DNA of 64,000 nt, taken from positions 1 to 64,000 of the forward strand of contig NIVC01002389.1 of the NCBI GenBank assembly GCA_002269645.1, written 5' to 3'. The position numbers and the translations under genes were made by a program. The stretch comes from Macrostomum lignano. Its lineage: Eukaryota. Under the pieces are notes generated by a model, which was given only the letters and a program-made list of their open reading frames with translations, was not told where the DNA came from and did not search any database. Of this stretch, positions 22,144 through 54,678 are shown piece by piece. Position 1 is the first letter of the stretch. Each line of letters opens with the position of its first letter.

Positions 22144-22521
22144 CTGACGCCGCGAGTCCCGCAGCTGCTCCCGCCGCTCCAGCTGACGCAGCCTGAGCAG
22201 CAGACTCTTGGCCCGCTCGCGCTCCTCCTCCGACAGGGGCTGGTGCCGCCCGCCGCCGCTGCCGTCGCGCCGCTTCAGCCACTTCTCCAGCCTGTTGGCC
22301 TCCCTACGGCGCTCCTCGCGCAAGAAGTCCCAGGCGGCCGGCACGCACCGGCCGTTGACCAGCGGGTCGTGGCGCGGATCGCGCGGCGCGCTACGCTTAG
22401 GCGCCGTTTTGGCGAGTTCGGCCAGCGCCGGGGTCAGCCGGTGCAGCGCCTTGCGCGACTTGCTGCTGTACTCGGCTGGAGCCTCGTCGGCACTGTCAGG
22501 TTCGGGCTCCGGCGCGGACAT
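22144..22521 (-). CDS. RRP36: rRNA biogenesis protein RRP36-like (DUF947), exon 1 (126 codons)
   Basis: MSAPEPE...EYSSKS...RDPRHDPLVNG...WDFLREERRRE...ERAKSLLLRLRQLERREQLRDSRRQ matches the RRP36 pattern (P-x-E-x-SSK, DPRF, Y-x-FL, coiled coil). It ends at a phase-0 CAG|GTGGGA donor. Confidence 0.8.
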
Positions 22522-24880: not shown

Positions 24881-27800
24881 GTGTTTCCCCTCCCAATGCA
24901 GTGTGTTTCCCCTCCCCAATGCAGTGTGTTTCCCCTCCCCAATGCCAGTGTGTTTCCCTCCCCAATGCAGTGTGTTTCCCCTCCCAATGCATAGTCTGTG
25001 TTTCCCCTCCCCAATGCAGCTGTGTTTCCCCTCCCCAATGCAGTGTGTGTTTCCCCTCCCAATGCCCAGTGTGTTTCCCCTCCCCAATGCAGTGTGTTTC
25101 CCCCCCAAATCCCCAAGCAGTGTGTTTCCCCTCCCCAATGCAGTGTGTTCCCTCCCCAATGCAGTGTGTTTCCCCTCCCCAATGGCAGTGTGTTTCCCCT
25201 CCCAATGCAGGTGTGTTTCCTACCTCCCAATGCAGTGTGTTTCCCCTCCCCAATGCAGTGTGTTTCCCCTCCCAATGCAGGCGTTGTGTTTCCCCTCCCC
25301 AATGCAGTGTGTTTCCCCTCCCCAATGCAGTGTGTTTCCCCTCCCAATGCAGTGTGTTTCCCCTCCCAATGCAGTGTGTTTCCCTCCCCCTCCCCCAATG
25401 CAGTGGTGTTTCCCTCCCCAATGCAGTGTGTTTCCCCTCCCCAATGCAGATGTGTTTCCCCTCCCAATGCAGTGTGTTTCCCCTCCCCAATGCAGTGTGT
25501 TTTCCCTCCCAATGCAGTGTGTTCCCCTCCCCAATGCAGTGTGTGTTTCCCCTCCCAATGCAGTGTGTTTCCCTCCCCAATGCAGTGTGTTTCCCCTCCC
25601 CAATGCAGTGTGTTTCCCCTCCCCAATGCAGAGTGTGTTTCCCTCCCCAATGCAGTGTGTTTCCCCTCCCCAATGCAGTGTGTTTCCTCCCCATGCAGTG
25701 TGTTCCCCTCCCAATGCAGTGTGTTTCCCTCCCCAAATCCGCAGTGTGCCCCTGTGTTTCCCCTCCCCAATGCAGTGTGTTTCCCCTCCCCAATGCAGTG
25801 CCACCTCCTCAATGCAGTGTGTTTCCCCTCCCTAATGCAGTGTGTTTCCCCTCCCAATGCAGTGTGTTTCCCCTCCCAATGCAGTGCCACCTCCCCAATG
25901 CAGTGTGTTTCCCCTCCCCAATGCAGTGTGTTTCCCCTCCCCAATGCAGTGTGTTCCCCTCCCCAATGCAGTGTTTTCCCCTCCCCAATGCAGTGTGTTT
26001 CCCTCCCCAATGCAGTGTGTTTCCCCTCCCAATGCAGTGTGTTTCCCCTCCCCAATGCAGTGTGTTTCCCCTCCCCAATGCAGTGCCCCTCCCCAATGCA
26101 GTGTGTTTCCCCTCCCCAATGCAGTGTGTTCCCCTCCCCAATGCAGTGTGTTTCCCCTCCCAATGCAGTGTGTTTCCCCTCCCCAATGCAGTGTGTTTCC
26201 CCTCCCAATGCAGTGTGTTTCCCCTCCCCAATGCAGTGTGTTTCCCCTCCCAATGCAGTGTGTTTCCCCTCCCAATGCAGTGTGTTTCCCCTCCCCAATG
26301 CAGTGTGTTTCCCCTCCCCAATGCAGTGTGTTTCCCCTCCCCAATGCAGTGTGTTTCCCCTCCCCAATGCAGTGTGTTTCCCCTCCCCAATGCAGTGTGT
26401 TTCCCCTCCCCAATGCAGTGTGTTTCCCCTCCCCAATGCAGTGTGTTTCCCCTCCCCAATGCAGTGTGTTTCCCCTCCCCAATGCAGTGTGTTTCCCCTC
26501 CCCAATGCAGTGTGTTTCCCCTCCCCAATGCAGTGTGTTTCCCCTCCCCAATGCAGTGTGTTTCCCCTCCCAATGCAGTGTGTTTCCCCTCCCCAATGCA
26601 GTGTGTTTCCCCTCCCCAATGCAGTGTGTTTCCCCTCCCCAATGCAGTGTGTTCCCCTCCCCAATGCAGTGTGTTTCCCCTCCCCAATGCAGTGTGTTTC
26701 CCCTCCCCAATGCAGTGTGTTTCCCCTCCCCAATGCAGTGTGTTTCCCCTCCCCAATGCAGTGTGTTTCCCCTCCCCAATGGTGTGTGTTTCCCCTCCCA
26801 ATGGTGTGTTTCCCCTCCCCAATGCAGTGTGTTTCCCCTCCCCAATGCAGTGTGTTTCCCCTCCCCAATGCAGTGTGTTTCCCCTCCCCAATGCAGTGTG
26901 TTTCCCCTCCCCAATGCAGTGTGTTTCCCCTCCCCAATGCAGTGTGTTTCCCCTCCCCAATGCAGTGTGTTTCCCCTCCCCAATGGTGTGTTTCCCCTCC
27001 CCAATGCAGTGTGTTTCCCCTCCCCAATGCAGTGTGTTTCCCCTCCCAATGCAGTGTGTTTCCCCTCCCCAATGCAGTGTGTTTCCCCTCCCCAATGCAG
27101 TGTGTTTCCCCTCCCCAATGCAGTGTGTTTCCCCTCCCCAATGCAGTGTGTTTCCCCTCCCCAATGCAGTGTGTTTCCCCTCCCCAATGCAGTGTGTTTC
27201 CCCTCCCAATGCAGTGTGTTTCCCCTCCCCAATGCAGTGTGTTTCCCCTCCCAATGCAGTGTGTTTCCCCTCCCCAATGCAGTGTGTTTCCCCTCCCCAA
27301 TGCAGTGTGTTTCCCCTCCCCAATGCAGTGTGTTTCCCCTCCCCAATGCAGTGTGTTTCCCCTCCCCAATGCAGTGTGTTTCCCCTCCCCAATGCAGTGT
27401 GTTTCCCCTCCCCAATGCAGTGTGTTTCCCCTCCCCAATGCAGTGTGTTTCCCCTCCCCAATGCAGTGTGTTTCCCCTCCCCAATGCAGTGTGTTTCCCC
27501 TCCCCAATGCAGTGTGTTTCCCCTCCCCAATGCAGTGTGTTTCCCCTCCCCAATGCAGTGTGTTTCCCCTCCCCAATGCAGTGTGTTTCCCCTCCCCAAT
27601 GCAGTGTGTTTCCCCTCCCCAATGCAGTGTGTTTCCCCTCCCCAATGCAGTGTGTTTCCCCTCCCAATGCAGTGTGTTTCCCCTCCCCAATGCAGTGTGT
27701 TTCCCCTCCCCAATGCAGTGTGTTTCCCCTCCCAATGCAGTGTGTTTCCCCTCCCAATGCAGTGTGTTTCCCCTCCCCAATGCAGTGTGTTTCCCCTCCC

Positions 27801-30800
27801 CAATGCAGTGTGTTTCCCCTCCCCAATGCAGTGTGTTTCCCCTCCCCAATGCAGTGTGTTTCCCCTCCCCAATGCAGTGTGTTTCCCCTCCCAATGCAGT
27901 GTGTTTCCCCTCCCCAATGCAGTGTGTTTCCCCTCCCCAATGCAGTGTGTTTCCCCTCCCCAATGCAGTGTGTTTCCCCTCCCCAATGCAGTGTGTTTCC
28001 CCTCCCCAATGCAGTGTGTTTCCCCTCCCCAATGCAGTGTGTTTCCCCTCCCCAATGCAGTGTGTTTCCCCTCCCCAATGCAGTGTGTTTCCCCTCCCCA
28101 ATGCAGTGTGTTTCCCCTCCCCAATGCAGTGTGTTTCCCCTCCCCAATGCAGTGTGTTTCCCCTCCCCAATGCAGTGTGTTTCCCCTCCCCAATGCAGTG
28201 CCACCTCCTCAATGCAGTGTGTTTCCCCTCCCTAATGCAGTGTGTTTCCCCTCCCCAATGCAGTGTGTTTCCCCTCCCCAATGCAGTGCCACCTCCCCAA
28301 TGCAGTGTGTTTCCCCTCCCCAATGCAGTGTGTTCCCCTCCCCAATGCAGTGTGTTTCCCCTCCCAATGCAGTGTGTTTCCCCTCCCCAATGCAGTGTGT
28401 TTCCCCTCCCCAATGCAGTGTGTTTCCCCTCCCCAATGCAGTGTGTTTCCCCTCCCCAATGCAGTGTGTTTCCCCTCCCAATGCAGTGTGTTTCCCCTCC
28501 CCAATGCAGTGTGTTTCCCCTCCCCAATGCAGTGTGTTTCCCCTCCCCAATGCAGTGTGTTTCCCCTCCCCAATGCAGTGTGTTTCCCCTCCCCAATGCA
28601 GTGTGTTTCCCCTCCCCAATGCAGTGTGTTTCCCCTCCCCAATGCAGTGTGTTTCCCCTCCCCAATGCAGTGCCACCTCCTCAATGCAGTGTGTTTCCCC
28701 TCCCTAATGCAGTGTGTTTCCCCTCCCCAATGCAGTGTGTTTCCCCTCCCCAATGCAGTGCCACCTCCCCAATGCAGTGTGTTTCCCCTCCCCAATGCAG
28801 TGTGTTCCCCTCCCAATGCAGTGTGTTTCCCCTCCCCAATGCAGTGTGTTTCCCCTCCCCAATGCAGTGTGTTTCCCCTCCCAATGCAGTGTGTTTCCCC
28901 TCCCCAATGCAGTGTGTTTCCCCTCCCCAATGCAGTGTGTTTCCCCTCCCCAATGCAGTGCCACCTCCCCAATGCAGTGTGTTTCCCCTCCCCAATGCAG
29001 TGTGTTTCCCCTCCCCAATGCAGTGTGTTTCCCCTCACCAATGCAGTGTGTTTCCCCTCCCCAATGCAGTGTGTTTCCCCTCCCCAATGCAGTGTGTTTC
29101 CCCTCCCCAATGCAGTGTGTTTCCCCTCCCAATGCAGTGTGTTTCCCCTCCCCAATGCAGTGTGTTTCCCCTCCCCAATGCAGTGTGTTTCCCCTCCCCA
29201 ATGCAGTGTGTTTCCCCTCCCCAATGCAGTGTGTTTCCCCTCCCCAATGCAGTGTGTTTCCCCTCCCCAATGCAGTGTGTTTCCCCTCCCCAATGCAGTG
29301 TGTTTCCCCTCCCCAATGCAGTGTGTTTCCCCTCCCCAATGCAGTGTGTTTCCCCTCCCCAATGCAGTGCCACCTCCCCAATGCAGTGTGTTTCCCCTCC
29401 CCAATGCAGTGTGTTTCCCCTCCCCAATGCAGTGTGTTTCCCCTCCCAATGCAGTGTGTTTCCCCTCCCCAATGCAGTGTGTTTCCCCTCCCCAATGCAG
29501 TGTGTTTCCCCTCCCCAATGCAGTGTGTTTCCCCTCCCAATGCAGTGTGTTTCCCCTCCCCAATGCAGTGTGTTTCCCCTCCCCAATGCAGTGTGTTTCC
29601 CCTCCCCAATGCAGTGTGTTTCCCCTCCCCAATGCAGTGTGTTTCCCCTCCCCAATGCAGTGTGTTTCCCCTCCCCAATGGTGTGTGTTTCCCCTCCCCA
29701 ATGGTGTGTGTTTCCCCTCCCCAATGCAGTGTGTTTCCCCTCCCCAATGCAGTGTGTTTCCCCTCCCCAATGCAGTGTGTTTCCCCTCCCCAATGCAGTG
29801 TGTTTCCCCTCCCCAATGCAGTGTGTTTCCCCTCCCCAATGCAGTGTGTTTCCCCTCCCCAATGCAGTGTGTTTCCCCTCCCCAATGGTGTGTGTTTCCC
29901 CTCCCCAATGCAGTGTGTTTCCCCTCCCCAATGCAGTGTGTTTCCCCTCCCCAATGCAGTGTGTTTCCCCTCCCCAATGCAGTGTGTTTCCCCTCCCCAA
30001 TGCAGTGTGTTTCCCCTCCCAATGCAGTGTGTTTCCCCTCCCCAATGCAGTGTGTTTCCCCTCCCCAATGCAGTGTGTTTCCCCTCCCCAATGCAGTGTG
30101 TTTCCCCTCCCAATGCAGTGTGTTTCCCCTCCCCAATGCAGTGTGTTTCCCCTCTCCAATGCAGTGTGTTTCCCCTCCCCAATGCAGTGTGTTTCCCCTC
30201 CCAATGCAGTGTGTTTCCCCTCCCCAATGCAGTGTGTTTCCCCTCCCCAATGCAGTGTGTTTCCCCTCCCCAATGCAGTGTGTTCCCCTCCCCAATGCAG
30301 TGTGTTTCCCCTCCCCAATGCAGTGTGTTTCCCCTCCCCAATGGTGTGTGTTTCCCCTCCCCAATGCAGTGTGTTTCCCCTCCCCAATGCAGTGTGTTTC
30401 CCCTCCCCAATGCAGTGTGTTTCCCCTCCCCAATGCAGTGTGTTTCCCCTCCCCAATGCAGTGTGTTTCCCCTCCCCAATGCAGTGTGTTTCCCCTCCCC
30501 AATGCAGTGTGTTTCCCCTCCCCAATGCAGTGTGTTTCCCCTCCCCAATGCAGTGTGTTTCCCCTCCCAATGCAGTGTGTTTCCCCTCCCCAATGCAGTG
30601 TGTTTCCCCTCCCCAATGCAGTGTGTTTCCCCTCCCCAATGCAGTGTGTTTCCCCTCCCAATGCAGTGTGTTTCCCCTCCCCAATGCAGTGTGTTTCCCC
30701 TCCCCAATGCAGTGTGTTTCCCCTCCCCAATGCAGTGTGTTTCCCCTCCCCAATGCAGTGTGTTTCCCCTCCCCAATGCAGTGTGTTTCCCCTCCCAATG

Positions 30801-31518
30801 CAGTGTGTTTCCCCTCCCCAATGCAGTGTGTTTCCCCTCCCCAATGCAGTGTGTTTCCCCTCCCCAATGCAGTGTGTTTCCCCTCCCCAATGCAGTGTGT
30901 TTCCCCTCCCCAATGCAGTGTGTTTCCCCTCCCCAATGCAGTGTGTTTCCCCTCCCCAATGCAGTGTGTTTCCCCTCCCCAATGCAGTGTGTTTCCCCTC
31001 CCCAATGCAGTGTGTTTCCCCTCCCCAATGCAGTGTGTTTCCCCTCCCCAATGCAGTGTGTTTCCCCTCCCCAATGCAGTGTGTTTCCCCTCCCCAATGC
31101 AGTGTGTTTCCCCTCCCCAATGCAGTGCCACCTCCTCAATGCAGTGTGTTTCCCCTCCCTAATGCAGTGTGTTTCCCCTCCCCAATGCAGTGTGTTTCCC
31201 CTCCCCAATGCAGTGCCACCTCCCCAATGCAGTGTGTTTCCCCTCCCCAATGCAGTGTGTTCCCCTCCCCAATGCAGTGTGTTTCCCCTCCCCAATGCAG
31301 TGTGTTTCCCCTCCCCAATGCAGTGTGTTTCCCCTCCCAATGCAGTGTGTTTCCCCTCCCCAATGCAGTGTGTTTCCCCTCCCCAATGCAGTGTGTTTCC
31401 CCTCCCCAATGCAGTGCCACCTCCTCAATGCAGTGTGTTTCCCCTCCCCAATGCAGTGCCACCTCCTCAATGCAGTGTGTTTCCCCTCCCTAATGCAGTG
31501 TGTTTCCCCTCCCCAATA
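24881..31518. repeat. 23-bp satellite in opposite orientation (TGTGTTTCCCCTCCCCAATGCAG)n, about 290 copies, truncated by the gap
   Basis: Same unit reverse-complemented; noisy near the gap; ends 11 nt before the RRP36 exon 2 acceptor. Confidence 0.99.
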
Positions 31519-31529
31519 CACTCCGGCAG

Positions 31530-31724
31530 GTGATGCAGGAGGTGCGCCGCGAGCAGGTGGAGCAGGCGGAGTGCAGCGGCCGGGTCAGCTACCTGTCCAG
31601 GGCGCAGCTGCGCGCCCGCCTGGAAGCCGCCAAAACTGCCAGCCTATCCGAGAAGGCGCGACAAAAACTGGAGAAGCGGAAAGCAGCTCGCGAGAAGAAG
31701 AGACGCCTGCCGCCGAAGTCGTGA
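31530..31724 (+). CDS. RRP36: RRP36-like, exon 2 (C-terminal 64 aa)
   Basis: Acceptor ccggcag|GTG in phase 0. VMQEVRREQVEQAECSGRVSYLSRAQLR...KRKAAREKKRRLPPKS resembles the RRP36 C-terminus (G-x-x-P/S-F/Y-L-K/S, basic tail ending in LP). AATAAA at 31797-31802. Confidence 0.75.
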   Translation: MMQEVRREQVEQAECSGRVSYLSRAQLRARLEAAKTASLSEKARQKLEKRKAAREKKRRLPPKS

Positions 31725-31899
31725 CCTCTGAGAGTCCGAGGCAGACTGGCGGGCATTTCAAGTTTAAATTTGCTTATTTATGTGTATAAACTGTTAAATA
31801 AATGCTTCAAATATTCAATTGAATCCACGGATGTACCTTTTATGTTTAATTATTTTTTAATATTTTCTGTTTCAACTTAGGATTTGTAAATATTCCTCA

Positions 31900-32460
31900 A
31901 TCAGTGGCCTGAAGGAGAAAAGAAGGAGGGGAGATGAAGCATGGAGGGAGAAAAGAGGGGAGGGAGGGAGAAAGGAGGGCATTGAGTGAGAAAAGGAGCA
32001 TTGAGGGAGAAAAGGAGGGCAGGTAGGGAGAAAAGGAGGGCAAGGAGGGAGAAAAGGAGGGCAGTGAGGGAGAAAAGGAGGGCAGGGAGGGAGAAAAGGA
32101 GCATTGAGTGAGAAAAGGAGCAGGGAGTGAGAAAAGGAGAGCAAGGAGGGAGAAAGGAGGGCAAGGAGGGAGAAAGGAGGGCAGGGAGGGAGGAAAGGAG
32201 GGCAGGAAGGGAGAAAAGGAGGGCAGGGAGGGAGAAAAGGAGGGCAGGGAGGGAGAAAAGGAGGGCAGGGAGGGAGGAAAGGAGGGCAGGAAGGGAGAAA
32301 AGGAGGGCAGGGAGGGAGAAAAGGAGGGCAGGGAGGGAGAAAAGGAGGGCAGGTAGGGAGAAAAGGAGGGCAGGGAGGGAGAAAAGGAGGGCAAGGAGGG
32401 AGAATGGAGGGCAGGGAGGGAGAAAAGGAGGGCAGGGAGGGAGAAAGGAGGGCAGGGAGT
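31900..32460. repeat. 21-bp G/A-rich minisatellite between RRP36 and TMCO4
   Basis: gggagggagaaaaggagggca units. Confidence 0.9.
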
Positions 32461-32844
32461 GACGGAGATAGCTGAGGCGCAGGTATCGAGCCGCAGCGGA
32501 CAGGGAGAGAGTGGGCAGTGCTGAGTAATTTATGCTCACTTAGGCTCGCCCGAGCACTGCAGATCTACACCCCTCCCCTCAGTCAGTTTGCTTGGCTATC
32601 TTATCAAACTCTGGCGCGTGGCAGCGCTCTGAGACATGAATAATTTGTGTTCTGTTTCTGTTTTATCGGCATTTCATTTTCAAAACAAACCACTATTGAG
32701 GAAATTTTCCACCACTTGTGCTCATGATTGCAAAGCCAATCCAATCTGCCTGTCAATTTCTCCACCGGAGCGTTTGAACGGCAGTCTAAACTAATCTCTA
32801 CTCATTTTCTTGGATTTTATAAATTTCAATAGTCTGCAAAAGCA

Positions 32845-35800
32845 ATGTTTAAAAAGAAACCCGCCGCAAGCAAGCCGGCTGCCGCAGGAGCAGCAGCAGA
32901 CGAGGCAAAGCAGAAGCTGCAAGCAGAGCCCGGGGCTGAGGCGACAGCCCGGCTCAACAATAACAACAGCGGCATGCTCTCTGATGCCGGCATCTTTGCC
33001 TACTGCTCTCTCACTGCTACCGCTCTGGCCCAGCTGTACCCAGAGGACTGGCACAAGTGAGCTCTCTGGTTCCCAGGGGCTGGGGTCTTTCTGCTGGTCT
33101 CTGCTTCTAGCCCTGAAGTGAGAACATCTCGTGTCTTCTATCTCCTTTCTGCACCTTAATCTCTTTACCCTCCCCTTCATCTCTTCACCCTGCCTCTTCA
33201 TCTCTTCACCCTGCCCCTTCATCTCTTCACCCTGCCTCTTCATCTCTTCACCCTGCCCCTTCATCTCTTCACCCTGCCCCTTCATCTCTTCACCCTGCCC
33301 CTTCATCTCTTCACCCTGCCCCTTCATCTCTTCACCCTGCCCCTTCATCTCTTCACCCTGCCCCTTCATCTCTTAACCCTGCCCCTTCATCTCTTCACCC
33401 TGCCCCTTCATCTCTTCACCCTGCCTCTTCATCTCTTCACCCTGCCCCTTCATCTCTTCACCCTGCCCCTTCATCTCTTCACCCTCCCCTTCATCTCTTC
33501 ACCCTGCCTCTTCATCTCTTCACCCTGCCCCTTCATCTCTTCACCCTGCCCCTTCATCTCTTCACCCTGCCCCTTCATCTCTTCACCCTCTCCTCTTTAT
33601 CTCACCCTTCTTCCTCTTTATATCACCCTTCTTCCTCTTTATCTCAGTCTTCTTACCCTTCATCTCCCCCTTCTCCCTTCCTTCTTCCCTTCTTTCCCCT
33701 TGCTCAAGTTTCAAATATTTCCATCCAACTCCAAATTTGTTTCCCTAAATCTCACTATTCTTTACTGAAAGGGCCTGTCAACTTAAGCTCATGAAGTGGA
33801 GTCCCTAATTATCCCCTTGTTTGTTCTCCTCTATCCCAAGTCCAATTTTCATCGCTTATTCACGAAACCCAGCTTCCTGGGTGTCACTGAGCAGAATGAC
33901 GTATCATTTGTATACATAGGTTACTCGGGCTCCTCTTTATGAGCTAAGTTGACAGGCCCTCTCAGCCTACTCCCCACTCTCACCCTCACCCGCTAGCCTC
34001 CACCCGCCTCTCCGCTCTGACCCCCGCCCACCACCCGCCTCCCCGCTTTGACCCCCGCCCACCGCCCGCCTCGCCGCTCTGACCCCCGCCCACCACCCGC
34101 CTCCCCGCTCTGACCCCCGCCCACCACCCGCCTGTCCACAGGGAATTCCGCGAGAAGTTCCTGGCCGACGTGCTCCACAAGCGGCCGGATTCGATTCGCA
34201 ACTCGGCCACCGCCATCCTTCGGCACGGCCAGGCCGACTGTTCCATGCTGCCGTTCGCCGAGGCGCTGCTGACCGAGGAGTCCGTCCGCGCCTGCCCGGA
34301 GATGGTGCTGCAGGACCTCCTGCTCGTCGCACTGCGCGAAGGCTGCTACGACGCCAGGGCTCGCTACCTGCTGAAGCACGTGGCCTTCGCCATGCGGATC
34401 AGCTGGGCCTCGCTGGAGGAGTGGGAGCTCAAAACTGCCGCGCTGTTAAACGATCCGGCCAGCGAGGCCGAGGTGGTGGACGAGGCGATGAAGAGGAACA
34501 GGTGATGCTGCAGATCTTGTTACGTAACTTGGATCGCGCTAGGCGCGAATGAGTGCTCGTAGCTACCGTTATTATTATTATTGAGACAGTCGGTGGCGCC
34601 ACATTGATACAGTCAGTGGCGTCAACTTATTGAGACAGTCGGTGGCGCCACAATATTAAGAGAGTCGGCGCCACATTATTGAGAGAGTTGGCGCCACATT
34701 GAGACAGTCGGTGGCGCCATATTATTGAGACAGTCAGTTGCACCACAATATTGAGACAGTCGGTGGCGCCACATCATTGAGAGAGTCGTTGGCGCCACAA
34801 TATTGAGACATTCAGTGGCGCCACAATATTGAGAGAGTCGGTGGCGTCACGTTATTGAGAGAGTCGGTGGCGCCACATCATTGAGAAAGTCGGTGGCGCC
34901 ACGTTATTGAGAAAGTCGGTGGCGCCACATCATTGAGAAAGTCAATGGCGCCACATTATTGAGAGAGTCGGTGGCGCCACATCATTGAGAGAGTCGGTGG
35001 CGCCACATCATTGAGAGAGTCGGTGGCGCCACATCATTGAGAAAGGCAGTGGCGCCACAATATTGAGAGAGTCGGTGGCGCCACATCATTGAGAGAGTCG
35101 GTGGCGCCACATCATTGAGAAAGCCAGTGGCGCCACATCATTGAGAAAGGCAGTGGCGCCACGTTATTGAGAGAGTCGGTGGCGCCACACTATTGCGAGT
35201 CCGTGGCGCCAAATATTGAGACAGTCAGTGGCGCCACAATATTGAGACAGTCAGTGGCGCCACAATATTGAGACAGTCAGTGGCGCCACAATATTGAGAC
35301 AGTCAGTGGCGCCACAATATTGAGACAGTCAGTGGCGCCACAATATTGAGAGAGTCGGTGGAGCCACATCATTGAGAGAGTCGGTGGCGCCACGTTATTG
35401 AGAGAGTCAGTGGCGCCACATCATTTAGAAAGGCAGTGGCGCCACAATATTGAGAGAGTCAGTGGCACCAACTTATCGAGACAGTCAATGGCGCCACAAT
35501 ATTGAGACAGTCAGTGGCGCCACAATATTGAGAAAGTCAGTGGCGCCACAATATTGAAACAGTGGCGCCACAATATTGAGAGAGTCAGTGGCACCAACTT
35601 ATCGAGACAGTCAATGGCGCCACAATATTGAGACAGTCAGTGGCGCCACAATATTGAAACAGTCAGTGGCGCCACAATATTGAGAGAGTCAGTGGCACCA
35701 ACTTATCGAGACAGTCAATGGCGCCACAATATTGAGACAGTCAGTGGCGCCACAATATTGAGAAAGTCAGTGGCGCCACAATATTGAGACAGTCAGTGGC

Positions 35801-38800
35801 GCCACAATATTGAGAGAGTCAGTGGCACCAACTTATCGAGACAGTCAATGGCGCCACACTATTGCGAGTCCGTGGCGCCACAATATTGAGAGAGTCAGTG
35901 GCACCAACTTATCGAGACAGTCAATGGCGCCACACTATTGCGAGTCCGTGGCGCCACAATATTGAGAGAGTCAGTGGCACCAAATCCAATATCGTTGATG
36001 GCAACCGCGCATCTGCAGGCGCCGCAAGGTGAACCGCGCCTTCTTAATCGGTGCCAGCGCCGTCGGCGGCGGCCTGCTGATCGGCCTGACGGGCGGACTG
36101 GCTGCCCCGCTGGTGGCCGCCGGCGCCGGCGTCATCATCGGCGGGGCGGGCGCCGCTGCCATCGGCACCGCGGCAGGCGCGGCCGTCCTCGGCTCCGTGT
36201 TCGGCGTGGCGGGCGCCGGCCTGACGGGCTGGAAGATGCGCAAGCGCGTGGGTAGCTTGGCGCAGTTCCAGTTTGTCCAGCTGACCCCGCCGCCTACTCC
36301 GCAGCTGCACCTGTGCATCGCAGTGTCGGGCTGGATTGATCAGGGCGACCTGGACTTCCTGCTGCCCTGGCAGTCCCTGGCTATGAGCCCCGAGCAGTAC
36401 GCGCTCTGCTGGGAGTCGCGCTACCTCAAGGAGATGGGCCAAGCGTTGGACTACTTTATGTCCTATCTGAAGTCCTTCGCTATCCAGGTGAGCTCTTCTT
36501 GCTTTACCAATCTCGTGTCCCCTCCCTAACAATCTCGTGTCCCCTCCCTAACAATCTCGTGTCCCTCCCTAACAATCTCGTGTCCCCTCCCTAACAATCT
36601 CATGTCCCCTCCCTAACAATCTCGTGTCCCCTCCCTAACAATCTCGTGTCCCCTCCCTAACAATCTCGTGTCCCCTCCCTAACAATCTCGTGTCCCTCCC
36701 TAACAATCTCGTGTCCCTCCCTAACAATCTCATGTCCCCTCCCTAACAATCTCATGTCCCCTCCCTAAAAATCTCGTGTCCCTCCCTAACAATCTCGTGT
36801 CCCTCCCTAACAATCTCGTGTCCCCTCCCTAACAATCTCATGTCCCCTCCCTAACAATCTCATGTCCCCTCCCTAACAATCTCATGTCCCCTCCCTAACA
36901 ATCTCATGTCCCCTCCCCATTAATCTCATGCCCCCTCCCCATTAATCTCATGCCCCCTCCCTACTAATCTCATGTCCCCTCCCCATTAATCCCATGCCCC
37001 CTCCCCATTAATCTCATGCCCCCTCCCTACTAATCTCATGTCCCCTCCCTAACAATCTCATGTCCCCTCCCTAACAATCTCATGTCCCCTCCCTAACAAT
37101 CTCGTGTCCCCTCCCCATTAATCTCATGCCCCCTCCCTAACAATCTCATGTCCCCTCCCCATTAATCTCATGCCCCCTCCCATTAATCTCATGCCCCCTC
37201 CCTACTAATCTCATGTCCCCTCCCTAACAATCTCATGTCCCCTCCCCATTAATCTCATGCCCCCTCCCTAACAATCTCATGTCCCCTCCCCATTAATCTC
37301 ATGCCCCCTCCCCATTAATCTCATGCCCCCTCCCTACTAATCTCATGTCCCCTCCCTAACAATCTCATGTCCCCTCCCCATTAATCTCATGCCCCCTCCC
37401 TAACAAGCTCATGCCCCCTCCCCATTAATCTCATGCCCCCTCCCCATTAATCTCATGCCCCCTCCCTACTAATCTCATGTCCCCTCCCTAACAATCTCAT
37501 GTCCCCTCCCTATCAATCTCATGTCCCCTCCCCATTAATCTCATGCCCCCTCCCTAACAATCTCATGTCCCCTCCCTAACAATCTCATGTCCCCTCCCCA
37601 TTAATCTCATGCCCCCTCCCTAACAATCTCATGTCCCCTCCCCATTAATCTCATGCCCCCTCCCCATTAATCTCATGCCCCCTCCCTACTAATCTCATGT
37701 CCCCTCCCTAACAATCTCATGTCCCCTCCCTAACAATCTCATGTCCCCTTCCCATTAATCTCATGCCCCCTCCCTAACAAGCTCATGCCCCCTCCCCATT
37801 AATCTCATGCCCCCTCCCCATTAATCTCATGCCCCCTCCCTACTAATCTCATGTCCCCTCCTCACCAATCTCATGTCCCCTCCCCATAATCTCATGTCCC
37901 CTTCCCATTAATCTCATGTCCCCTCCCTACTAATCTCATGTCCCCTCCTCACCAATCTCATTTCCCCTTCCCATTAATCTCATGCCCCCTCCCCATTAAT
38001 CTCATGCCCCCTCCCCATTAATCTCATGCCCCCTCCCCATTAATCTCATGCCCCCTCCCCATTAATCTCATGTCCCCTCCCCGCCAATCTCATGTCCCTT
38101 CCTCACCAATCTCATGTCCCTTCCTGACCAATCTCATGTCCCTTCCTCACCAATCTCATGTCCCTTCCTGACCAATCTCATGTCCCTTCCTGACCAATCT
38201 CATGTCCTCTCGCCACCCCATGAACACCCGCAGGAAACGCTGAAGCTGACGGTGCTGTCGGGCCTGCTAGCGGCGATCACCTGGCCAGCCGCGGTACTGT
38301 CCGCCTCCAACGTAATCGACAACCCTTGGTCCGTGTGCGGCAACAGGGCTGTGGAAGGCGGCAAGGTGCTGGCCGACGTGCTGCTGAGCCGGGAGTACGG
38401 CCAGCGGCCGGTCACCCTGATCGGCTTCAGCATGGGCGCCAAGCTGATCTTCAGCTGCCTGCAGGAGCTGGCGAGTAGGAAGAAGGGTGAGAGTCTCGGA
38501 GTGGCTGGCTGTATGTGTTGCCTGGCAGGGGGTTAATCGATTGGTTTAATAACTGGTTAAATTGATTGAGTGCACTATTTATTTGTTGATAGACTCACTA
38601 CTCGATTGATTGATTGATGCGTCGGTTTATTGATTTGTTTTTTTTAGTTTGTTTGTTGATTAACTGTCTACGGGTACTTGATTGATCGATTTATTGATTA
38701 ACCTGCTGATTTATTGATTGACAGGTTCATTCGTTGACTGATTGATTGGTGACTGATTAATCAGTTGGTGACTGGTGACTGACTGATTAGTGATTGATTG

Positions 38801-48859: not shown

Positions 48860-51800
48860 TCAAGACAGCTGGTTTCCAAGAAACTGAGAATTAAGAGCCA
48901 GCAGAAGCTGTTGCTGCTGCTGCTGCTGCTGCTGTTGCTGCTGCTGTTGCTGCGCCAAGGTGGCCAGACTCAGCAGCTGGAGCTGGTGCTGATGCAGGTG
49001 CAGATGCTGGTGCTGCTGCAACTGCTGGTGCTGGTGAAATCCGCCAGGCGGTCGCCTCCTGGAGTAGGGCGCCAGCCGGTGCTGGTGGTGGTTGTGGTGG
49101 TCCTCGCAGCCGGGCGATCCGTTGCACCTGGTCGATGACGGGTTGTCAAAGGCGGCCTTGTCCTGACGCACTCGGTCAAGCATGCCCAGCAGCTTCTTGA
49201 TGGCGCCCTGGGTGAACTGCTCCGCCTCCAGGTCGGCTCGGTCCAGATTCAGCAGTCTGTCGAAGCTGTACTTCTTCAGCCTGTCGTGGTACTTGTGCAT
49301 CCGGTGTGCCTTCAGCCAGGTGAGCAGCTTGGCGCTGTACTCTGAGCTGCAAAGGTGAGGGAAAGACATGGCGATGTGATAAGCATTGCTTTCTGCATTG
49401 ATGAGACTGCAAGCGCCAGAAAGGAGCAGGTTAGGCGCTAGAAGAGAACAGGTGAGGCGCTAGAAGGGAACAGGTGAGGCGCTAGAAGGGAACAGGTGAG
49501 GCGCTAGAAGAGAACAGGTGAGGTGCTAGAAGGGAACAGTTGAGGTGCTAGAAGGGAACAGGTGAGGAGCTAGAAGAGAACAGGTGAGGCGCTAGAAGAG
49601 AACAGGTGAGGTGCTAGAAGGGAACAGTTGAGGTGCTAGAAGGGAACAGGTGAGGAGCTAGAAGAGAACAGGTGAGGCGCTAGAAGAGAACAGGTGAGGC
49701 GCTAGAAGAGAACAGGTGAGGCGCTAGAAGAGAACAGGTGAGGCGCTAGAAGAGAACAGGTGAGGCGCTAGAAGAGAACAGGTGAGGCGCTAGAAGAGAA
49801 CAGGTGAGGTGCTAGAAGGGAACAGGTGAGGTGCTAGAAGAGAACAGGTGAGGCGCTAGAAGGGAACAGGTGAGGTGCTAGAAGAGAACAGGTGAGGCGC
49901 TAGAAGAGAACAGGTGAGGCGCTAGAAGAGAACAGGTGAGGCGCTAGAAGAGAACAGGTGAGGCGCTAGAAGAGAACAGGTGAGGTGCTAGAAGGGAACA
50001 GGTGAGGTGCTAGAAGAGAACAGGTGAGGCGCTAGAAGGGAACAGGTGAGGTGCTAGAAGGGAACAGGTGAGGTGCTAGAAGAGAACAGGTGAGGCGCTA
50101 GAAGGGAACAGGTGAGGTGCTAGAAGGGAACAGGTGAGGTGCTAGAAGAGAACAGGTGAGGCGCTAGAAGAGAACAGGTGAGGCGCTAGAAGGGAACAGG
50201 TGAGGCGCTAGAAGAGAACAGGTGAGGCGCTAGAAGAGAACAGGTGAGGCGCTAGAAGAGAACAGGTGAGGCGCTAGAAGAGAACAGGTGAGGCGCTAGA
50301 AGAGAACAGGTGAGGAGCTAGAAGGGAACAGATAATATCGCAGCGAACTCACCCGCCTCTCTGACTTCCATTGTGTTCAATGGGCAGCTTTGCTGCTGCC
50401 TGAAGCGGTTTGGCGACCTGCTGTGGCTGCGACTTCAAAGTTTGCGGCTGAATCTGATGCGGCAGCGGCTGCGGCAGAATTCCCAGGCCTTGGCGAATTG
50501 AGAGCAGAAAGTCCGATCCAGATTGCAAACTTTGAGATTTTCATGACTCAGTTGCTTCATTAATAACAGCAGCAGCATTGATAACAGTCCCTGCCGTCAG
50601 ATTTCAGCCATGGACAACTTTTTAAAGAAAAAACTTGAAAGTCACTCCGAATCTACCAGACTCCCAGCAAAAGTCACTCCCAGCACCCCAGAAAGTCACA
50701 ACACCCCAAAAAGTTACTCCAAGGACCTCAGAGTCACTCCCAACTTACCGAAAAGTCACTCCCAATCCCCTAGAAAGTCACTCCCAACCTACCGAAAAGT
50801 CACGCTCAAGCTCCCAGAAAGTCACTCCCAACCTCTCGAAAAGTCACTCTCAAGCTCCCAGAAAGTCACTCCCAACCTACCGAAAAGTCACTCTCAGCAC
50901 CTCGGAAAGTCACGGATGGAATGTCACTCCTAGCACCCCAGAATGTCACTCTCAGTCGCCCGTAAATTCGTAAATTCACTCTCAATCTCCCAGGAAGTTA
51001 CTCCTAACTCTCCGGAAAGAAAGTGATTATCTACTCAAGAAAGTCACTCCCAAGTCCCAGCCGCCGAGCCCAGGTTGCGACTGTCCGGCAGTTAGCAAGG
51101 TCTCGGACGCCCCCAGACCCGAGAGGGGCTTCGTGCTAAACAAGCAATTATTTCCAACGCAGGGCAGACTCGGAGCAACAGTGGGAGGCTTTTGTCAATT
51201 ACGGCTGCCAAAGGGGAGACAAAAGAAGGGAGGCCTCAGTTCGGGGGATGAGGACGGGGCTGGGGGTTCGTTTCTCGGGTTGCCGTGTTTCCCAGCCGGT
51301 GTAATTAACGAGTGGGAGCCCTCTGAGTCTGGGCTGAGCTCTGCAGGCGACTGACCCAACTCAATCTGGGAGGCTGGCGAGCAGCTTCATCCAATCTCAC
51401 TCTTCCCGCCCTCTCGCTGCCTCACTCAGCTGTCGGACTCCCATTTCGTGTGTTCCACTTTCTACTTTTTTCTCCCCCCCTTCTTACAGAGCAGTTTGCC
51501 CTAATGAGCCGCTGGGAGGTTGGACTGGGGAGGATGGCGTGAGGCCGGGGGGGGGGAGCCGAGCCGGGAACTCCAAGGTCTGCTCTTCTGCTTCCGGGTG
51601 AAAGCAAACGGAGGCAACGCTTAAATGTTCTTCTATCTGTTCTTGCATCAATGTTATATCGATATATTTTTATACCGACTTTTATTAGGGTGCTGAAGGT
51701 GCCGCACTCAAGTGCCGGGGGTTCGATTCCCGCATGGGTGTGCTCACACACTCGCAATCTCTGAGGGTGAGCAACTCACCTTCAGGAGTCAGCGGAATGG

Positions 51801-52876
51801 AGCTGCGGCAGCGCCCAGAACCCCCCCCCCTGCCGACTGACTAATTTATGTAATGTAACTAATTTATACTGACATTCTAAATGTCACCATCCGTTCGCAC
51901 ACCTGAGACTTTCTGGAAAATCACTCATACCAGATTAAAATTAAGGTAACTCCTCAAAACAGACTGTCGATAGCAGGTTAATAAAGTCACTCAAGAGCAC
52001 CAGAGAGCCACTCCCAGCACACCAGAAAGTCACACCCAGCACCCCAGAGAGCCACTCCCAGCACACCAGAAAGTCACTCCCAGCACCCCAGAAAGTCACT
52101 CCCAGCACCCCAGAAAGTCACTCCCAGCACCCCAGAAAGTCACTCCCAGCACCCCAGAAAGTCACTCCCAGCACCCCAGAGAGCCACTCCCAGCACACCA
52201 GAAAGTCACTCCCAGCACCCCAGAAAGTCACTCCCAGCACCCCAGAAAGTCACTCCCAGCACCCCAGAAAGTCACTCCCAGCACCCCAGAAAGTCACTCC
52301 CAGCACCCCAGAAAGTCACTCCCAGCACCCCAGAAAGTCACTCCCAGCACCCCAGAAAGTCACTCCCAGCACCCCAGAAAGTCACTCCCTGCCACCCCAG
52401 AAAGTCACTCCCAGCACCCCAGAAAGTCACTCCCAGCACCCCAGAAAGTCACTCCCAGCCACCCCAGAAAGTCACTCCCAGCACCCCAGAAAGTCATTCC
52501 CAGCACCTTAGAAAGTCACTCCCAGTACCTCAGAAAGTCACTCCCAGCACCCCAGAAAGTCACTCTAGCTTCACTCCAACTCACCCGCCAGCATCGCCTG
52601 CTGGCTGTTCAACGCAGCTAGCTGGCCGCCGAGTCCGGTTCCCGCAGTCTGGGCAAAGTAGGCCGCAGCGGCGGCGGCGGCGGCAGAAGACTGCGAGGCT
52701 GGCAGCAGCGCGGCGGGTGGCAACAACAGTCCAGGCGGCTGCTGCTGCTGCTGCACCTGGGCAAATGCGGCCAGGAATGCCTGCTGCTGCTGCTGCGATG
52801 CAGAGCCGGAGGCCATGACAGCCTGGCTGGGGTACAGCAGCTGGGCACTTGACAGCGAGTAGAGCTGCATCTGCAT
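48860..52876 (-). CDS. SAMD4: Smaug/Vts1 (SAMD4)-family RNA-binding SAM-domain protein with Q/A- and Q/H-rich regions; 5' exon structure only partly resolved
   Basis: Last exon 49346-48860 encodes WLKAHRMHKY...LEAEQFTQGAIKKLL, matching the Smaug SAM motifs WLKxLRLHKY and TxGAxxK. Upstream exons end at GTGAGT donors at 50353, 51780 and 52585. The first coding exon probably starts MQMQLYS at 52876. Frame continuity needs a 1-nt correction in the G10 run near 51825, and an in-frame TGA near 50545 is unresolved. Confidence 0.75.
49420..50330. repeat. 22-bp minisatellite (GCTAGAAGAGAACAGGTGAGGC)n, about 41 copies, in the last intron of the Smaug-like gene
   Basis: Tandem units. Confidence 0.95.
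50640..51050. repeat. Degenerate copy of the GAAAGTCACTCCCAGCACCCCA minisatellite
   Basis: Recurrent gaaagtcactc motifs. Confidence 0.8.
52000..52570. repeat. 22-bp minisatellite (GAAAGTCACTCCCAGCACCCCA)n directly after a Smaug-like donor site
   Basis: Tandem units. Confidence 0.95.
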
Positions 52877-54454: not shown

Positions 54455-54547
54455 ACAAACAAACTAACTAACTAACTAAATAACCAACTAACTAACTAGC
54501 TAACTCACTAACTTACTAACTAACTAACTAACTAACTAACTAAGTAT

Positions 54548-54633
<86 letters not shown>

Positions 54634-54634
54634 C

Positions 54635-54670
<36 letters not shown>

Positions 54671-54678
54671 GCTAACTC

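What the first reader, a model, noticed from the sequence alone, without database searches (positions are those of the whole stretch)
33057..52584. Intronic minisatellites built from splice-signal modules: a possible splice-site-seeded repeat expansion system
Seen on the sense strand: TMCO4 intron 1 3' array has CTGAC units running into the acceptor. Intron 3 has about 77 units of CTAAC/CTAAT plus a pyrimidine tract. Intron 4 has about 8 units of GCTCACCCCATCCTTCAG|G before the true acceptor. The Smaug last intron has about 41 units of CCTCACCTGTTCTCTTCTAG|C, mirroring its real acceptor CCTCACCTTTGCAG|C. The RRP36 intron has the tract-plus-CAG units. Arrays next to donors look donor-like (GAGTGACT after GG|GTGAGT at 52584; AAGTGAGGTAG in 43529-44188). 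The arrays are unrelated in sequence but share this logic. Inference: tandem duplication is repeatedly seeded at splice signals, or such units are selectively tolerated, enlarging introns and perhaps acting as sponges for U2/U2AF/U1 or as recursive sites. Counter-example: the intron 2 array lacks a pyrimidine tract.
Basis: partly seen in the sequence, partly recalled or inferred. Interest (0 to 1): 0.82.

Follow-up and report, generated by a model that had tools for sequence, protein, structure and literature searches.

The report
Ordinary minisatellites inflating short flatworm introns
The introns of three neighbouring genes of the flatworm Macrostomum lignano are swollen by unstable tandem repeats; a few of these grew out of the real splice sites, as in known cases from amphioxus and human F7, but nothing indicates a special splice-signal repeat system.

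Summary
The window is Macrostomum lignano. My gene models for TMCO4 (100% to an annotated protein), RRP36 and a Smaug-type-SAM gene place them in introns.

The claimed shared splice-signal logic does not exceed base composition.
- With unit-shuffle controls, sense-strand acceptor, donor and branch motifs are not enriched (Fisher p 0.18, 0.28, about 1).
- 7 of 14 units look splice-like on the sense strand, and 7 of 14 on the antisense strand.
- Donor-like purine-rich arrays also lie outside introns.
- The CTAAC columns are the most variable part of the 77-unit array.

What is real:
- Arrays make up 68% of intron bases. Three introns would be 42-113 nt without them.
- Two arrays grew from the authentic splice site. 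Others stop 8-22 nt short of the acceptor.
- Copy numbers differ up to 25-fold among three copies that are 96-99.8% identical in unique DNA.

Verdict: these are hypervariable minisatellites expanding inside short introns, at least two of them ancient. The boundary-spanning ones match amphioxus "mirages" and the human F7 IVS7 VNTR. A sponge role is untested and a recursive-splicing role is contradicted.

The parts
2890..22068 (-). RRP36 intron array, left (inverted) copy: 23-bp unit x837.7, 99% matches
   Evidence: TRF. This copy runs straight into the 21-bp spacer array and lacks RRP36 exon 2.
22144..22521 (-). RRP36 exon 1, with donor CAG|GTGGGA (score 8.3)
   Evidence: Pfam PF06102, E 2.5e-10.
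24881..31517 (+). RRP36 intron array, right copy: 23-bp unit GTGTTTCCCCTCCCCAATGCAGT x291.8, cut off by the N gap at 24231-24880. 276 pseudo-acceptors score at least 5; the real acceptor scores 4.2.
   Evidence: The array ends 12 nt before the acceptor AG at 31528-31529.
31530..31724 (+). RRP36 exon 2 through the stop codon
   Evidence: Exon 1 plus exon 2 gives 190 aa, identical to the product of the locus in the older assembly (L001).
31939..32459 (+). Spacer array between RRP36 and TMCO4: 21-bp unit GCAGGGAGGGAGAAAAGGAGG x25.4. It is purine-rich on the gene strand, and its pyrimidine tract lies on the antisense strand.
   Evidence: This is a non-intronic counter-example.
32845..40573 (+). 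TMCO4 (DUF726) gene. Exons: 32845-33056, 34142-34501, 36019-36487, 38234-38486, 39932-40573. All four introns are GTGAG...CAG.
   Evidence: open frame. (100% to P0001, Macrostomum lignano). Introns 1 and 4 sit at the same codons as introns of the nemertean Tubulanus TMCO4.
33149..33678 (+). Intron 1, 5' part: two adjoining pyrimidine-rich 21-bp arrays (x21.1 and x4.7). They lie 92 nt from the donor and about 460 nt from the acceptor.
   Evidence: No acceptor, donor or CTRAY signal on the sense strand. Absent from L001.
34000..34133 (+). Intron 1, 3' end: 31-bp unit CCACCCGCCTCCCCGCTCTGACCCCCGCCCA x4.3 (x15.3 in L001). It is AG-free and ends 8 nt before the acceptor.
   Evidence: The acceptor core itself is not a copy of the unit (p 0.92).
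34579..35982 (+). Intron 2: 26-bp unit TATTGAGACAGTCAGTGGCGCCACAA x54.9. It makes up 93% of the intron. CTGAC occurs only on the antisense strand, in 21 units.
36508..38211 (+). Intron 3: 22-bp unit CAATCTCATGTCCCCTCCCTAA x77.8 (x109.7 in L001). It makes up 98% of the intron, starts 20 nt after the donor and ends 22 nt before the acceptor. There are only 2 AG dinucleotides in 1704 nt.
   Evidence: The CTAAC columns are the least conserved in the unit.
38678..39125 (+). Intron 4: TTGA-rich array with a 28-bp unit
39598..39931 (+). Intron 4: 34-bp unit CCCATCCTTCAG|GCGGGTATCTGAGGCCGCTCAC x7.4 (x18.4 in L001), followed by a degenerate tail that ends in the real acceptor at 39930-39931. Pseudo-acceptors score 8.1; the real site scores 12.0.
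   Evidence: The real acceptor region aligns with the unit through CAG|G (p 0.039).
40631..41017 (+). TMCO4 3' flank: 24/48-bp purine-rich array AGGTAGATAAGG..., with 24 donor-like sites scoring at least 5. It is not in an intron.
   Evidence: It is related to the Sec2 intron unit (p 0.01).
43529..44188 (+). Intron of a small secreted-protein gene (Sec2: exons 43285-43528 and 44189-44353). It holds the 21-bp array TAGACAGAGAAGTGAGGTAGA x22 at 43661-44103.
   Evidence: The unit is not related to the adjacent donor (p 0.27).
48860..52876 (-). Smaug-type-SAM gene. Exons: 52876-52585, 50488-50353, and 49346-48860 (with stop).
   Evidence: the only open 3-exon frame. (SAM domain against Smaug 1OXJ, E 6e-4). 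(homology to the paralogue P0121 starts exactly at the last exon).
49413..50331 (-). Last intron: 22-bp unit CTCACCTGTTCTCTTCTAG|CGC x41.8, making up 91% of the intron. 41 pseudo-acceptors score 8.7; the real site, 66 nt downstream, scores 8.4. The reverse complement reads CAG|GTGAGG, giving 38 antisense donor sites scoring at least 8.
50670..50913 (-). Intron 1: 22/44-bp array of the same GGGAGTGACTTT family
52000..52593 (-). Intron 1, 5' end: 22-bp unit GGTGCTGGGAGTGACTTTCTGG x25.6 at 52000-52565. It is preceded by two degenerate in-register units, the first of which (52593-52572) spans the exon 1/intron 1 boundary.

Best explanation
These are ordinary hypervariable minisatellites that arose by local tandem duplication inside short introns that already existed. 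They were then expanded and contracted by replication slippage or unequal exchange.

The founding introns were only about 40-140 nt long. A 21-34-nt unit taken from such an intron must include, or touch, the branch/pyrimidine region or the donor-proximal region. An array can also only grow until it reaches bases that splicing or coding needs.

This explains three things: why units look like splice modules, why arrays stop 8-22 nt from acceptors and about 20 nt from donors, and why in two cases the authentic splice site is itself the degenerate terminal repeat.

The arrays are removed with the intron. Pseudo-sites are presumably ignored, or their products are degraded.

- **Shown:** the arrays exist, where they sit, their instability, their local origin in two cases, the great age of two host introns, and the lack of motif enrichment.
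- **Inferred:** the duplication mechanism and the neutrality of the arrays.
For: - **Organism and background.** The window is Macrostomum lignano. About 15% of that genome is reported to be simple and tandem repeats (PMC5730564).
- **Intron geometry.** Arrays make up 68% of intron bases, 36% of non-coding flanks and 3% of exons. The non-array remainders of three introns are 113, 42 and 87 nt. One array-free intron read in the neighbouring WSC genes is about 83 nt, and another appears to be about 170 nt.
- **Age of the host introns.** TMCO4 introns 1 and 4 split the same codons as in a nemertean orthologue. The introns therefore predate the arrays.
- **Instability.** Three copies that are 96-99.8% identical in unique DNA differ in copy number: 4.3 vs 15.3, 78 vs 110, 7.4 vs 18.4, and 34 vs at least 292 vs 838. 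One array is absent from one copy.
- **Local origin.** The donor boundary is an in-register zeroth unit. The intron 4 acceptor is a degenerate last unit.
- **No motif selection.**
  - Shuffle tests are not significant on the sense strand.
  - 7/14 units look splice-like on the sense strand and 7/14 on the antisense strand, against a 24-41% baseline for random windows treated as units.
  - The branch-like columns are the most variable.
  - Donor-like purine arrays also occur outside introns.
Against: - Pseudo-acceptors as strong as the real site lie upstream of it. There are 41 at 8.7 against 8.4 in the Smaug-like last intron, and 276 at 5.6 against 4.2 in RRP36. Under strict neutrality these should cause mis-splicing, so suppression or tolerance is needed and is unexplained.
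- Intronic arrays tend to be pyrimidine-rich on the sense strand (9 against 2 among clearly skewed units, p 0.065), while flank arrays are purine-rich. This hints at an orientation filter.
- The sample is small: 14 intronic arrays from about 4 genes at one locus.
- No RNA data were available.
- The splice-site matrices are generic, not trained on this species.
Confidence: 0.7

Rival explanations
1. Selective tolerance filter. Duplications arise anywhere, but only arrays that are harmless to splicing survive in introns. That would favour arrays that are pyrimidine-rich on the sense strand, poor in AG when next to acceptors, and weak in pseudo-donors. Splicing would then shape which units persist and in which orientation, without any seeding and without any function for the arrays.
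For: - Sense-strand pyrimidine bias of intronic units: 9 against 2, p 0.065. Flank arrays are purine-rich.
- The two arrays that abut acceptors are essentially AG-free: the 31-bp array has none, and the 22-bp array has 2 AG in 1704 nt.
- Pseudo-donors in the boundary-derived array have decayed, from GG|GTGAGT (10.2) to GA|GTGACT (2.1).
Against: - The bias is not significant.
- Absence of AG is expected about three times in four from unit composition alone (my own rough estimate, not computed with a tool).
- The Smaug-like last-intron, RRP36 and TMCO4 intron 4 arrays carry many good AG sites upstream of the real acceptor.
- The Sec2 intron array carries 27 sense donors scoring at least 5.
Confidence: 0.2
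2. Functional splice-factor decoys or recursive sites. The arrays would be kept because they bind U2AF, SF1, U2 or U1, or because they allow stepwise removal of long introns.
For: - Hundreds of tract-plus-CAG units lie in a single RRP36 intron.
- 41 strong pseudo-acceptors lie in the Smaug-like last intron.
- 43 CTRAY motifs lie in a 1.7-kb stretch of TMCO4 intron 3 that is almost free of AG and could in principle act as redundant distant branch sites.
Against: - No unit has an AG|GT junction, so recursive splicing at the units is not possible.
- The motifs are not enriched over shuffles or over the antisense strand.
- The branch-like columns are the least conserved.
- Copy number varies up to 25-fold between near-identical copies, and one array is missing in one copy.
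- Array-free introns of neighbouring genes carry the same GTGAG...CAG splice signals.
Confidence: 0.04
3. Assembly artefact. The arrays, or their sizes, would be products of long-read mis-assembly.
For: - An N gap at 24231-24880 sits at the centre of a head-to-head duplicate. The right contig starts inside the 23-bp array.
- The 838-copy array is 99% uniform.
- A 1-nt homopolymer difference breaks Sec1 in the window.
Against: All TMCO4-region arrays except the 21-bp intron 1 arrays are present, with the same units and in the same places, in an independent older assembly (GCA_002269645.1, L001). Artefacts may therefore affect copy numbers and the palindrome, but not the existence of the arrays.
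Confidence: 0.06

Closest known systems
[quoted passage not shown] 2002, Nucleic Acids Res)
   Same: - Short tandem units (10-160 bp) that overlap 5' or 3' splice sites and so multiply AG/GT signals.
- Length instability between haplotypes.
- Here, the Smaug-like intron 1 array includes 9 exonic bases plus the donor as its zeroth unit. The TMCO4 intron 4 array ends in the real acceptor.
   Different: - Most arrays here do not span a boundary. They are internal to the intron and stop 8-22 nt from the acceptor.
- The exonic share of the unit is tiny: 9 nt in one case, and possibly 1 nt in the other.
- Whether splicing stays normal, as reported for mirages, could not be tested.
- The host is a flatworm rather than a cephalochordate.
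Human F7 IVS7 37-bp VNTR (PMC1557585)
   Same: The first repeat spans the exon-intron boundary, so the authentic donor is followed by a tandem series of 5' pseudo-sites that stay silent. The Smaug-like intron 1 array has this same layout.
   Different: - In F7 the pseudo-sites are identical to the real donor and are functional in principle. Here they have decayed (2.1 against 10.2).
- F7 has a handful of copies. Here there are about 26, plus a second array of the same family in the same intron.
Classical hypervariable minisatellites (VNTRs) with strand-asymmetric G-rich/C-rich units (my own background knowledge)
   Same: - Unit sizes of 9-44 bp.
- Strong purine/pyrimidine strand asymmetry.
- Large copy-number differences between alleles.
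- Occurrence in introns, flanks and spacers alike.
   Different: - The density is extreme: 68% of intron bases at this locus.
- I tested for a shared core motif and did not find one.
Intron gain or sliding by tandem duplication of AGGT-containing segments (PMC3265369, PMC4974935, PMC2891723)
   Same: Tandem duplication that involves splice signals changes intron structure. The Sec2 intron, which is 68% array, is absent from the tandem paralogue Sec1 at the same codon.
   Different: - TMCO4 introns 1 and 4 are ancient, so the arrays there did not create the introns.
- Gain and loss of the Sec2 intron could not be told apart.
Recursive splice sites and repeat-RNA protein sponges such as PNCTR-PTBP1 (my own background knowledge)
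   Same: Only the idea is shared: many splice-factor-like motifs lying in one transcript.
   Different: - No unit has a juxtaposed 3'ss|5'ss.
- There is no binding or expression evidence.
- Copy number is not constrained.

Membership tests
Mirage / F7-IVS7-type boundary-spanning minisatellite | Tandem array of short units within or adjoining an intron | tested here: met
   TRF. Gene models.
Mirage / F7-IVS7-type boundary-spanning minisatellite | The repeat unit spans an exon-intron boundary, so the authentic splice site is one of the repeats | tested here: inconclusive
   - Met for the Smaug-like intron 1 22-bp array. The in-register boundary unit scores p 0.028 and beats all 252 22-mers of exon 1.
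- Likely met for the TMCO4 intron 4 34-bp array (p 0.039).
- Not met for the TMCO4 31-bp, 26-bp, 22-bp and 21-bp arrays, the RRP36 23-bp array and the Sec2 21-bp array.
- Borderline for the Smaug-like last-intron array (one 8-mer, p about 0.1).
Mirage / F7-IVS7-type boundary-spanning minisatellite | Length instability between haplotypes or copies | tested here: met
   Copy numbers differ up to 25-fold among three copies that are 96-99.8% identical.
Mirage / F7-IVS7-type boundary-spanning minisatellite | Pseudo-sites remain silent and the mRNA is spliced normally | not testable with these tools
   No transcript data were available. The only indirect support is that the annotated protein P0001 matches the model that uses the real sites.
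Recursive splice (ratchet) sites | Juxtaposed acceptor and donor, YnNCAG|GTRAGT, inside the repeat unit | tested here: not met
   There are no AGGT sites in the intron 2, intron 3 and Smaug-like last-intron arrays. No array unit has both acceptor and donor scores of at least 3. Only three single non-repeat sites do: one in the RRP36 intron and two in TMCO4 intron 4.
Splice-factor sponge or decoy repeat | Motif enrichment on the transcribed strand beyond composition | tested here: not met
   Fisher p is 0.18 (acceptor), 0.28 (donor) and about 1 (CTRAY) on the sense strand. Splice-like units number 7/14 on each strand.
Splice-factor sponge or decoy repeat | Binding of U2AF, SF1 or U1, and a dosage effect | not testable with these tools
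   This needs CLIP and perturbation experiments. The 25-fold copy-number variation argues against dosage constraint.
TMCO4 (DUF726) gene | Full-length homology and the DUF726 domain | tested here: met
   100% to M. lignano P0001. 45-53% to metazoan TMCO4 proteins, all carrying PF05277.
   The SAM-like exon matches Smaug 1OXJ at E 6e-4 and Vts1 at about 5e-3. There is no Pfam hit. The protein-database search returned a single hit, the M. lignano paralogue P0121, and no Smaug orthologue.

The most novel reading that the evidence does not exclude
In Macrostomum lignano, intron growth genome-wide might be dominated by minisatellites born from the splice-site-proximal parts of introns that were once 40-140 nt long. 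Splicing would impose an orientation and composition filter on them: pyrimidine-rich on the sense strand, AG-free next to acceptors, and decayed pseudo-donors. Many introns would then carry tens to hundreds of redundant branch-like sites or decoy acceptors that the spliceosome must actively ignore. That would be a general rule for how introns inflate, and a natural system for studying splice-site choice among identical competitors.
Probability: 0.15. Interest if true: 0.55.

Novelty: new member of a known kind. Interest (0 to 1): 0.25.

Why it matters
As it stands, this is mostly a caution. In a genome that is about 15% tandem repeat and has short introns, almost any intronic repeat unit will contain something that looks like a branch point, a pyrimidine tract, an AG or a GT. 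It will do so on either strand.

The useful residue is modest.
- Two clear flatworm examples of arrays that grew out of an authentic splice site. This kind was previously described in amphioxus ("mirages") and in human F7.
- Introns in which dozens to hundreds of pseudo-acceptors, as good as the real one, lie upstream of it.

If RNA data showed these are cleanly ignored, the locus would be a convenient natural test bed for 3' splice-site choice. A confirmed genome-wide orientation bias would say something about how splicing constrains intron expansion.

Tried and rejected
- **A mini genome-wide test on more M. lignano loci.**
  - My third protein search (WSC family) returned only three hits, and only one had a contig.
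  - That locus (L002) turned out to overlap the right end of the window and has almost no gene calls.
  - P0002, P0039 and P0008 are not on record.
  - The sample therefore stayed at 14 intronic arrays.
- **A shared G-rich core motif (GGGAGG / CCCCTCCC) linking the arrays.** I rejected this. Among 210 unit pairs, the number with p of 0.05 or less (10) equals the chance expectation. Only the two Smaug-like intron 1 arrays are clearly related.
- **Use of pseudo-sites visible in annotated proteins.** P0002 differs from P0001 at the exon 3/4 junction, but this looks like a prediction difference and not use of an array site.
- **RNA genes hidden in the introns.** Rfam gave no matches at gathering thresholds.
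- **The 'mirror' between the Smaug-like last-intron unit and its real acceptor.** It is a single 8-mer, p about 0.1.
- **The RRP36 and TMCO4 intron 1 acceptor cores as copies of their units.** I rejected this; only the last partial unit upstream aligns.

Full report
**Source and gene models**

The window comes from the flatworm Macrostomum lignano. A five-exon model on the plus strand gives an open 643-codon frame. Its exons are 32845-33056, 34142-34501, 36019-36487, 38234-38486 and 39932-40573, and all four introns are GTGAG...CAG. The model is 100% identical to the annotated M. lignano protein BOX15_Mlig003167g1 and 45-53% identical to metazoan TMCO4 proteins, all of which carry DUF726.

RRP36 is split between the two arms of the window. 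Exon 1 lies at 22521-22144 on the minus strand and exon 2 at 31530-31724 on the plus strand. The joined product is identical to that of the same locus in the older assembly, and Pfam PF06102 supports it.

The label rests on a weak SAM-domain match to Drosophila Smaug (1OXJ, E 6e-4) and to yeast Vts1. Pfam finds nothing. The paralogue P0121 becomes similar exactly at the start of the last exon, which supports that acceptor.

A small secreted-protein gene, which I call Sec2, has one intron at 43529-44188.

The same locus in assembly GCA_002269645.1 was fetched as L001. It is collinear: an alsin-like gene, then RRP36, TMCO4 and Sec1.

**Checking the observation**

Four details need correcting.
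- Only 43 of about 77 intron 3 units carry CTAAC, CTAAT or CTGAC.
- The RRP36 arrays lie outside the given coordinates.
- The array beside the donor at 52584 is a poor donor mimic by matrix score (2.1, against 10.2 for the real site).
- The two arrays in Smaug-like intron 1 belong to one family. The other pairs are no more alike than chance.

**Is the 'splice-signal logic' more than chance?**

I scored each consensus unit, treated as a circular tandem, with generic donor and acceptor matrices and for the branch motif CTRAY. I did this on both strands and compared the result with composition-preserving shuffles of the same unit.
- For 14 intronic arrays (12 from the window and 2 from the alsin-like gene in L001), the combined sense-strand p-values are 0.18 (acceptor), 0.28 (donor) and about 1 (CTRAY). 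The antisense donor signal is, if anything, stronger (0.022).
- Under a fixed criterion (acceptor at least 5, donor at least 5, or CTRAY present), 7 of 14 units are splice-like on the sense strand and 7 of 14 on the antisense strand. Random 22-31-nt windows of array-free sequence treated as units give 24-41%.
- The strongest single signal is antisense. It scores 11.2, with 38 sites of at least 8.
- Purine-rich units with donor-like GT sites occur just as readily outside introns. The TMCO4 3' flank has 24 sites of at least 5, and the Smaug-like 3' flank has 11.
- The Sec2 intron unit resembles the TMCO4 3'-flank unit (p 0.01) but not its own donor (p 0.27).
- In the 77-unit array, the CTAAC columns are the least conserved positions (40-90% identity, against 80-99% at all but one of the other columns).
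- The only trend is that intronic units tend to be pyrimidine-rich on the sense strand: 9 against 2 among clearly skewed units, p 0.065. Flank arrays tend to be purine-rich.

**What is real**

Between 31530 and 53000, arrays make up 68% of intron bases, 36% of non-coding flanks and 3% of exons. TMCO4 introns 2 and 3 and the Smaug-like last intron are 93%, 98% and 91% array. Without the arrays they would be 113, 42 and 87 nt long. One array-free intron read in the neighbouring WSC-domain genes is about 83 nt, and another appears to be about 170 nt; both begin with GTGAG donors like those of the array-bearing introns.

TMCO4 introns 1 and 4 interrupt the same codons as introns of the nemertean Tubulanus polymorphus orthologue. 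These introns are therefore old, and the arrays expanded inside them. Introns 2 and 3 lie about 10 codons from the nearest Tubulanus introns.

In an intron this short, a 21-34-nt internal segment must include or touch the branch/pyrimidine region or the donor-proximal region. An array can then expand only until it meets bases that splicing or coding requires. The positions fit this.
- The intron 3 array starts 20 nt after the donor and ends 22 nt before the acceptor.
- The 31-bp intron 1 array ends 8 nt before the AG.
- The RRP36 array ends 12 nt before the AG.
- The Smaug-like last-intron array, together with a partial unit ahead of it, runs from about 11 nt after the donor to 66 nt before the acceptor.

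**Origin from real splice sites**

Two arrays include the authentic site.
- **Smaug-like intron 1.** The segment TGCTGGCGG|GTGAGTTGGAGTG consists of 9 exonic bases plus the donor. It lies exactly two periods upstream of the first full unit TGCTGGGAGTGACTTTCTGGGG. At that fixed register it aligns better than shuffles (p 0.028) and better than any of the 252 22-mers of exon 1. The unit between them is an obvious degenerate copy.
- **TMCO4 intron 4.** The real acceptor region ATCTGAG-TCTCTCCCC-TCC-CCAG|G aligns with the unit ATCTGAGGCCGCTCACCCCATCCTTCAG|G (p 0.039). It is preceded by TTTGAGGCCGCTCAC, a near-exact piece of the unit.

For the other arrays, the acceptor or donor core is not a copy of the unit.

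**Instability**

The right arm of the window, the inverted left arm and L001 are 96-99.8% identical in unique DNA. Their copy numbers nevertheless differ.

| Array | Copy numbers in the three copies |
|---|---|
| RRP36 23-bp | 34, at least 292, 838 |
| TMCO4 intron 1, 31-bp | 4.3, 4.3, 15.3 |
| TMCO4 intron 2, 26-bp | 55, 74 |
| TMCO4 intron 3, 22-bp | 78, 110 |
| TMCO4 intron 4, 34-bp | 7.4, 18.4 |
| 23-bp array downstream of Sec2 | 69, at least 244 |

L001 lacks the 21-bp intron 1 arrays together with about 320 bp of adjoining sequence. This is what unconstrained minisatellites look like. It argues against a dosage-sensitive role.

**Mechanism**

*Shown.* The arrays lie in introns that already existed; they are unstable; some contain the authentic splice site as a terminal degenerate unit; and the splice-like motifs are neither strand-specific nor conserved.

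*Inferred.* A local tandem duplication in a short intron was followed by slippage or unequal exchange. Array limits are set by purifying selection on the essential splice signals and exons. The arrays leave the transcript with the intron. Pseudo-donors downstream of the real donor stay silent, as was shown experimentally for the F7 IVS7 VNTR (PMC1557585); here they have also decayed.

*Left unexplained.* Pseudo-acceptors upstream of the real one are as strong as it by generic scoring. There are 41 at 8.7 against 8.4 in the Smaug-like last intron, and 276 at 5.6 against 4.2 in RRP36. Use of the last Smaug-like pseudo-site would shift the frame, by my reading. The cell must therefore ignore these sites or degrade the products.

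**Rivals**

- A selective orientation and composition filter is plausible and compatible with the main explanation, but it is unproven (p 0.065).
- Recursive splicing at the units is excluded, because no unit has an AG|GT junction.
- A sponge or decoy role is untested and is disfavoured by the copy-number variation.
- Assembly artefacts may affect copy numbers and the palindrome. They do not explain the arrays themselves: the arrays of the TMCO4 region, apart from the 21-bp intron 1 arrays, recur in an independent assembly.

**Comparison with known cases**

- M. lignano is reported to be about 15% simple and tandem repeat, with a mean intron length of 1.1-1.4 kb (PMC5730564).
[quoted passage not shown] There they multiply AG/GT signals, vary in length between haplotypes, and do not disturb splicing (PMC3087553, PMC3902484).
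- The human F7 IVS7 37-bp VNTR has its first unit across the exon 7 boundary (PMC1557585).
- The Smaug-like intron 1 array, and probably the TMCO4 intron 4 array, belong to this kind. The remainder are ordinary intronic VNTRs.

I therefore rate the finding as a new member of a known kind, of low to moderate interest.

Noticed in passing
window 1-24230 against 24881-35985, with an N gap at 24231-24880: The left part of the window is an inverted second copy of the RRP36-TMCO4 5' region, 98-99.7% identical in unique DNA. It is joined head-to-head to the right copy across a 650-N gap. The left copy has 838 copies of the 23-bp unit and lacks RRP36 exon 2 together with about 420 bp. The right contig begins inside the array. 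This is either a mis-scaffolded haplotype or homeologue, or a real palindromic duplication.
   Followed up: partly
window 42439-42852 (Sec1) and 43285-44353 (Sec2); L001 21710-22123: Two tandem paralogues encode a small secreted cysteine-containing protein. Sec1 has no intron. Sec2 has a 660-nt intron, 68% array, that splits the homologous codon. This is an intron presence/absence difference, and gain or loss is undecided. In the window, Sec1 also has a 1-nt homopolymer deletion (GGGG against GGGGG in L001) that breaks the frame; this could be a sequencing error or a pseudogene.
   Followed up: partly
window 33765-33965: A MITE-like element of about 200 bp with 21-nt terminal inverted repeats (95% complementary) lies inside TMCO4 intron 1. 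It belongs to the roughly 850-bp segment (33149-33999) that is missing from L001.
   Followed up: partly
window 49413-50331, plus strand: On the strand antisense to the gene, the 22-bp unit reads AACAG|GTGAGG. This gives 38 near-consensus donor sites in a row. Several other sense-pyrimidine units also contain (C)TCACC, the reverse complement of GGTGAG. No plus-strand gene was identified here.
   Followed up: partly
window 36508-38211: This 1.7-kb array has only 2 AG dinucleotides but 43 CTRAY motifs upstream of the TMCO4 exon 4 acceptor. It forms an unusually long stretch without AG, in which distant branch points would be possible in principle.
   Followed up: partly
window 54900-62000, minus strand; L002: A cluster of at least four tandem genes with WSC and PAN/apple-like domains. 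Each has two exons and a short array-free intron. Only 3% of this stretch is array. L002, from contig NIVC01002389.1, overlaps this cluster and extends beyond the end of the window.
   Followed up: partly
window 39060-39200: Two single AG|GT junctions in TMCO4 intron 4, neither part of a repeat unit, have both good acceptor and good donor scores (6.0/9.1 and 5.1/10.9); the coordinates are my estimate from reading the sequence. They could be recursive-type sites or the edges of an unannotated micro-exon.
   Followed up: no
window 63504-63542 and 54450-54764: A short interstitial telomere-type repeat, (CTAACC)n x6.7, which is TTAGGG on the other strand. There is also a 79-copy (AACT)n microsatellite.
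   Followed up: no
window 31939-32459, 40631-41017, 48521-48730: Arrays in spacers and 3' flanks are purine-rich on the strand of the adjacent gene (pyrimidine fraction 0.05-0.22). Most intronic arrays show the opposite skew. M. lignano uses spliced-leader trans-splicing and polycistronic precursors (PMC5730564), so some of these 'flanks' may be transcribed.
   Followed up: no
TMCO4 introns 2 and 3 (window 34502-36018 and 36488-38233): These two intron positions lie about 10 codons from the nearest introns of the Tubulanus orthologue, whereas introns 1 and 4 coincide exactly. This could reflect intron sliding or independent gain. Two species are not enough to decide.
   Followed up: no
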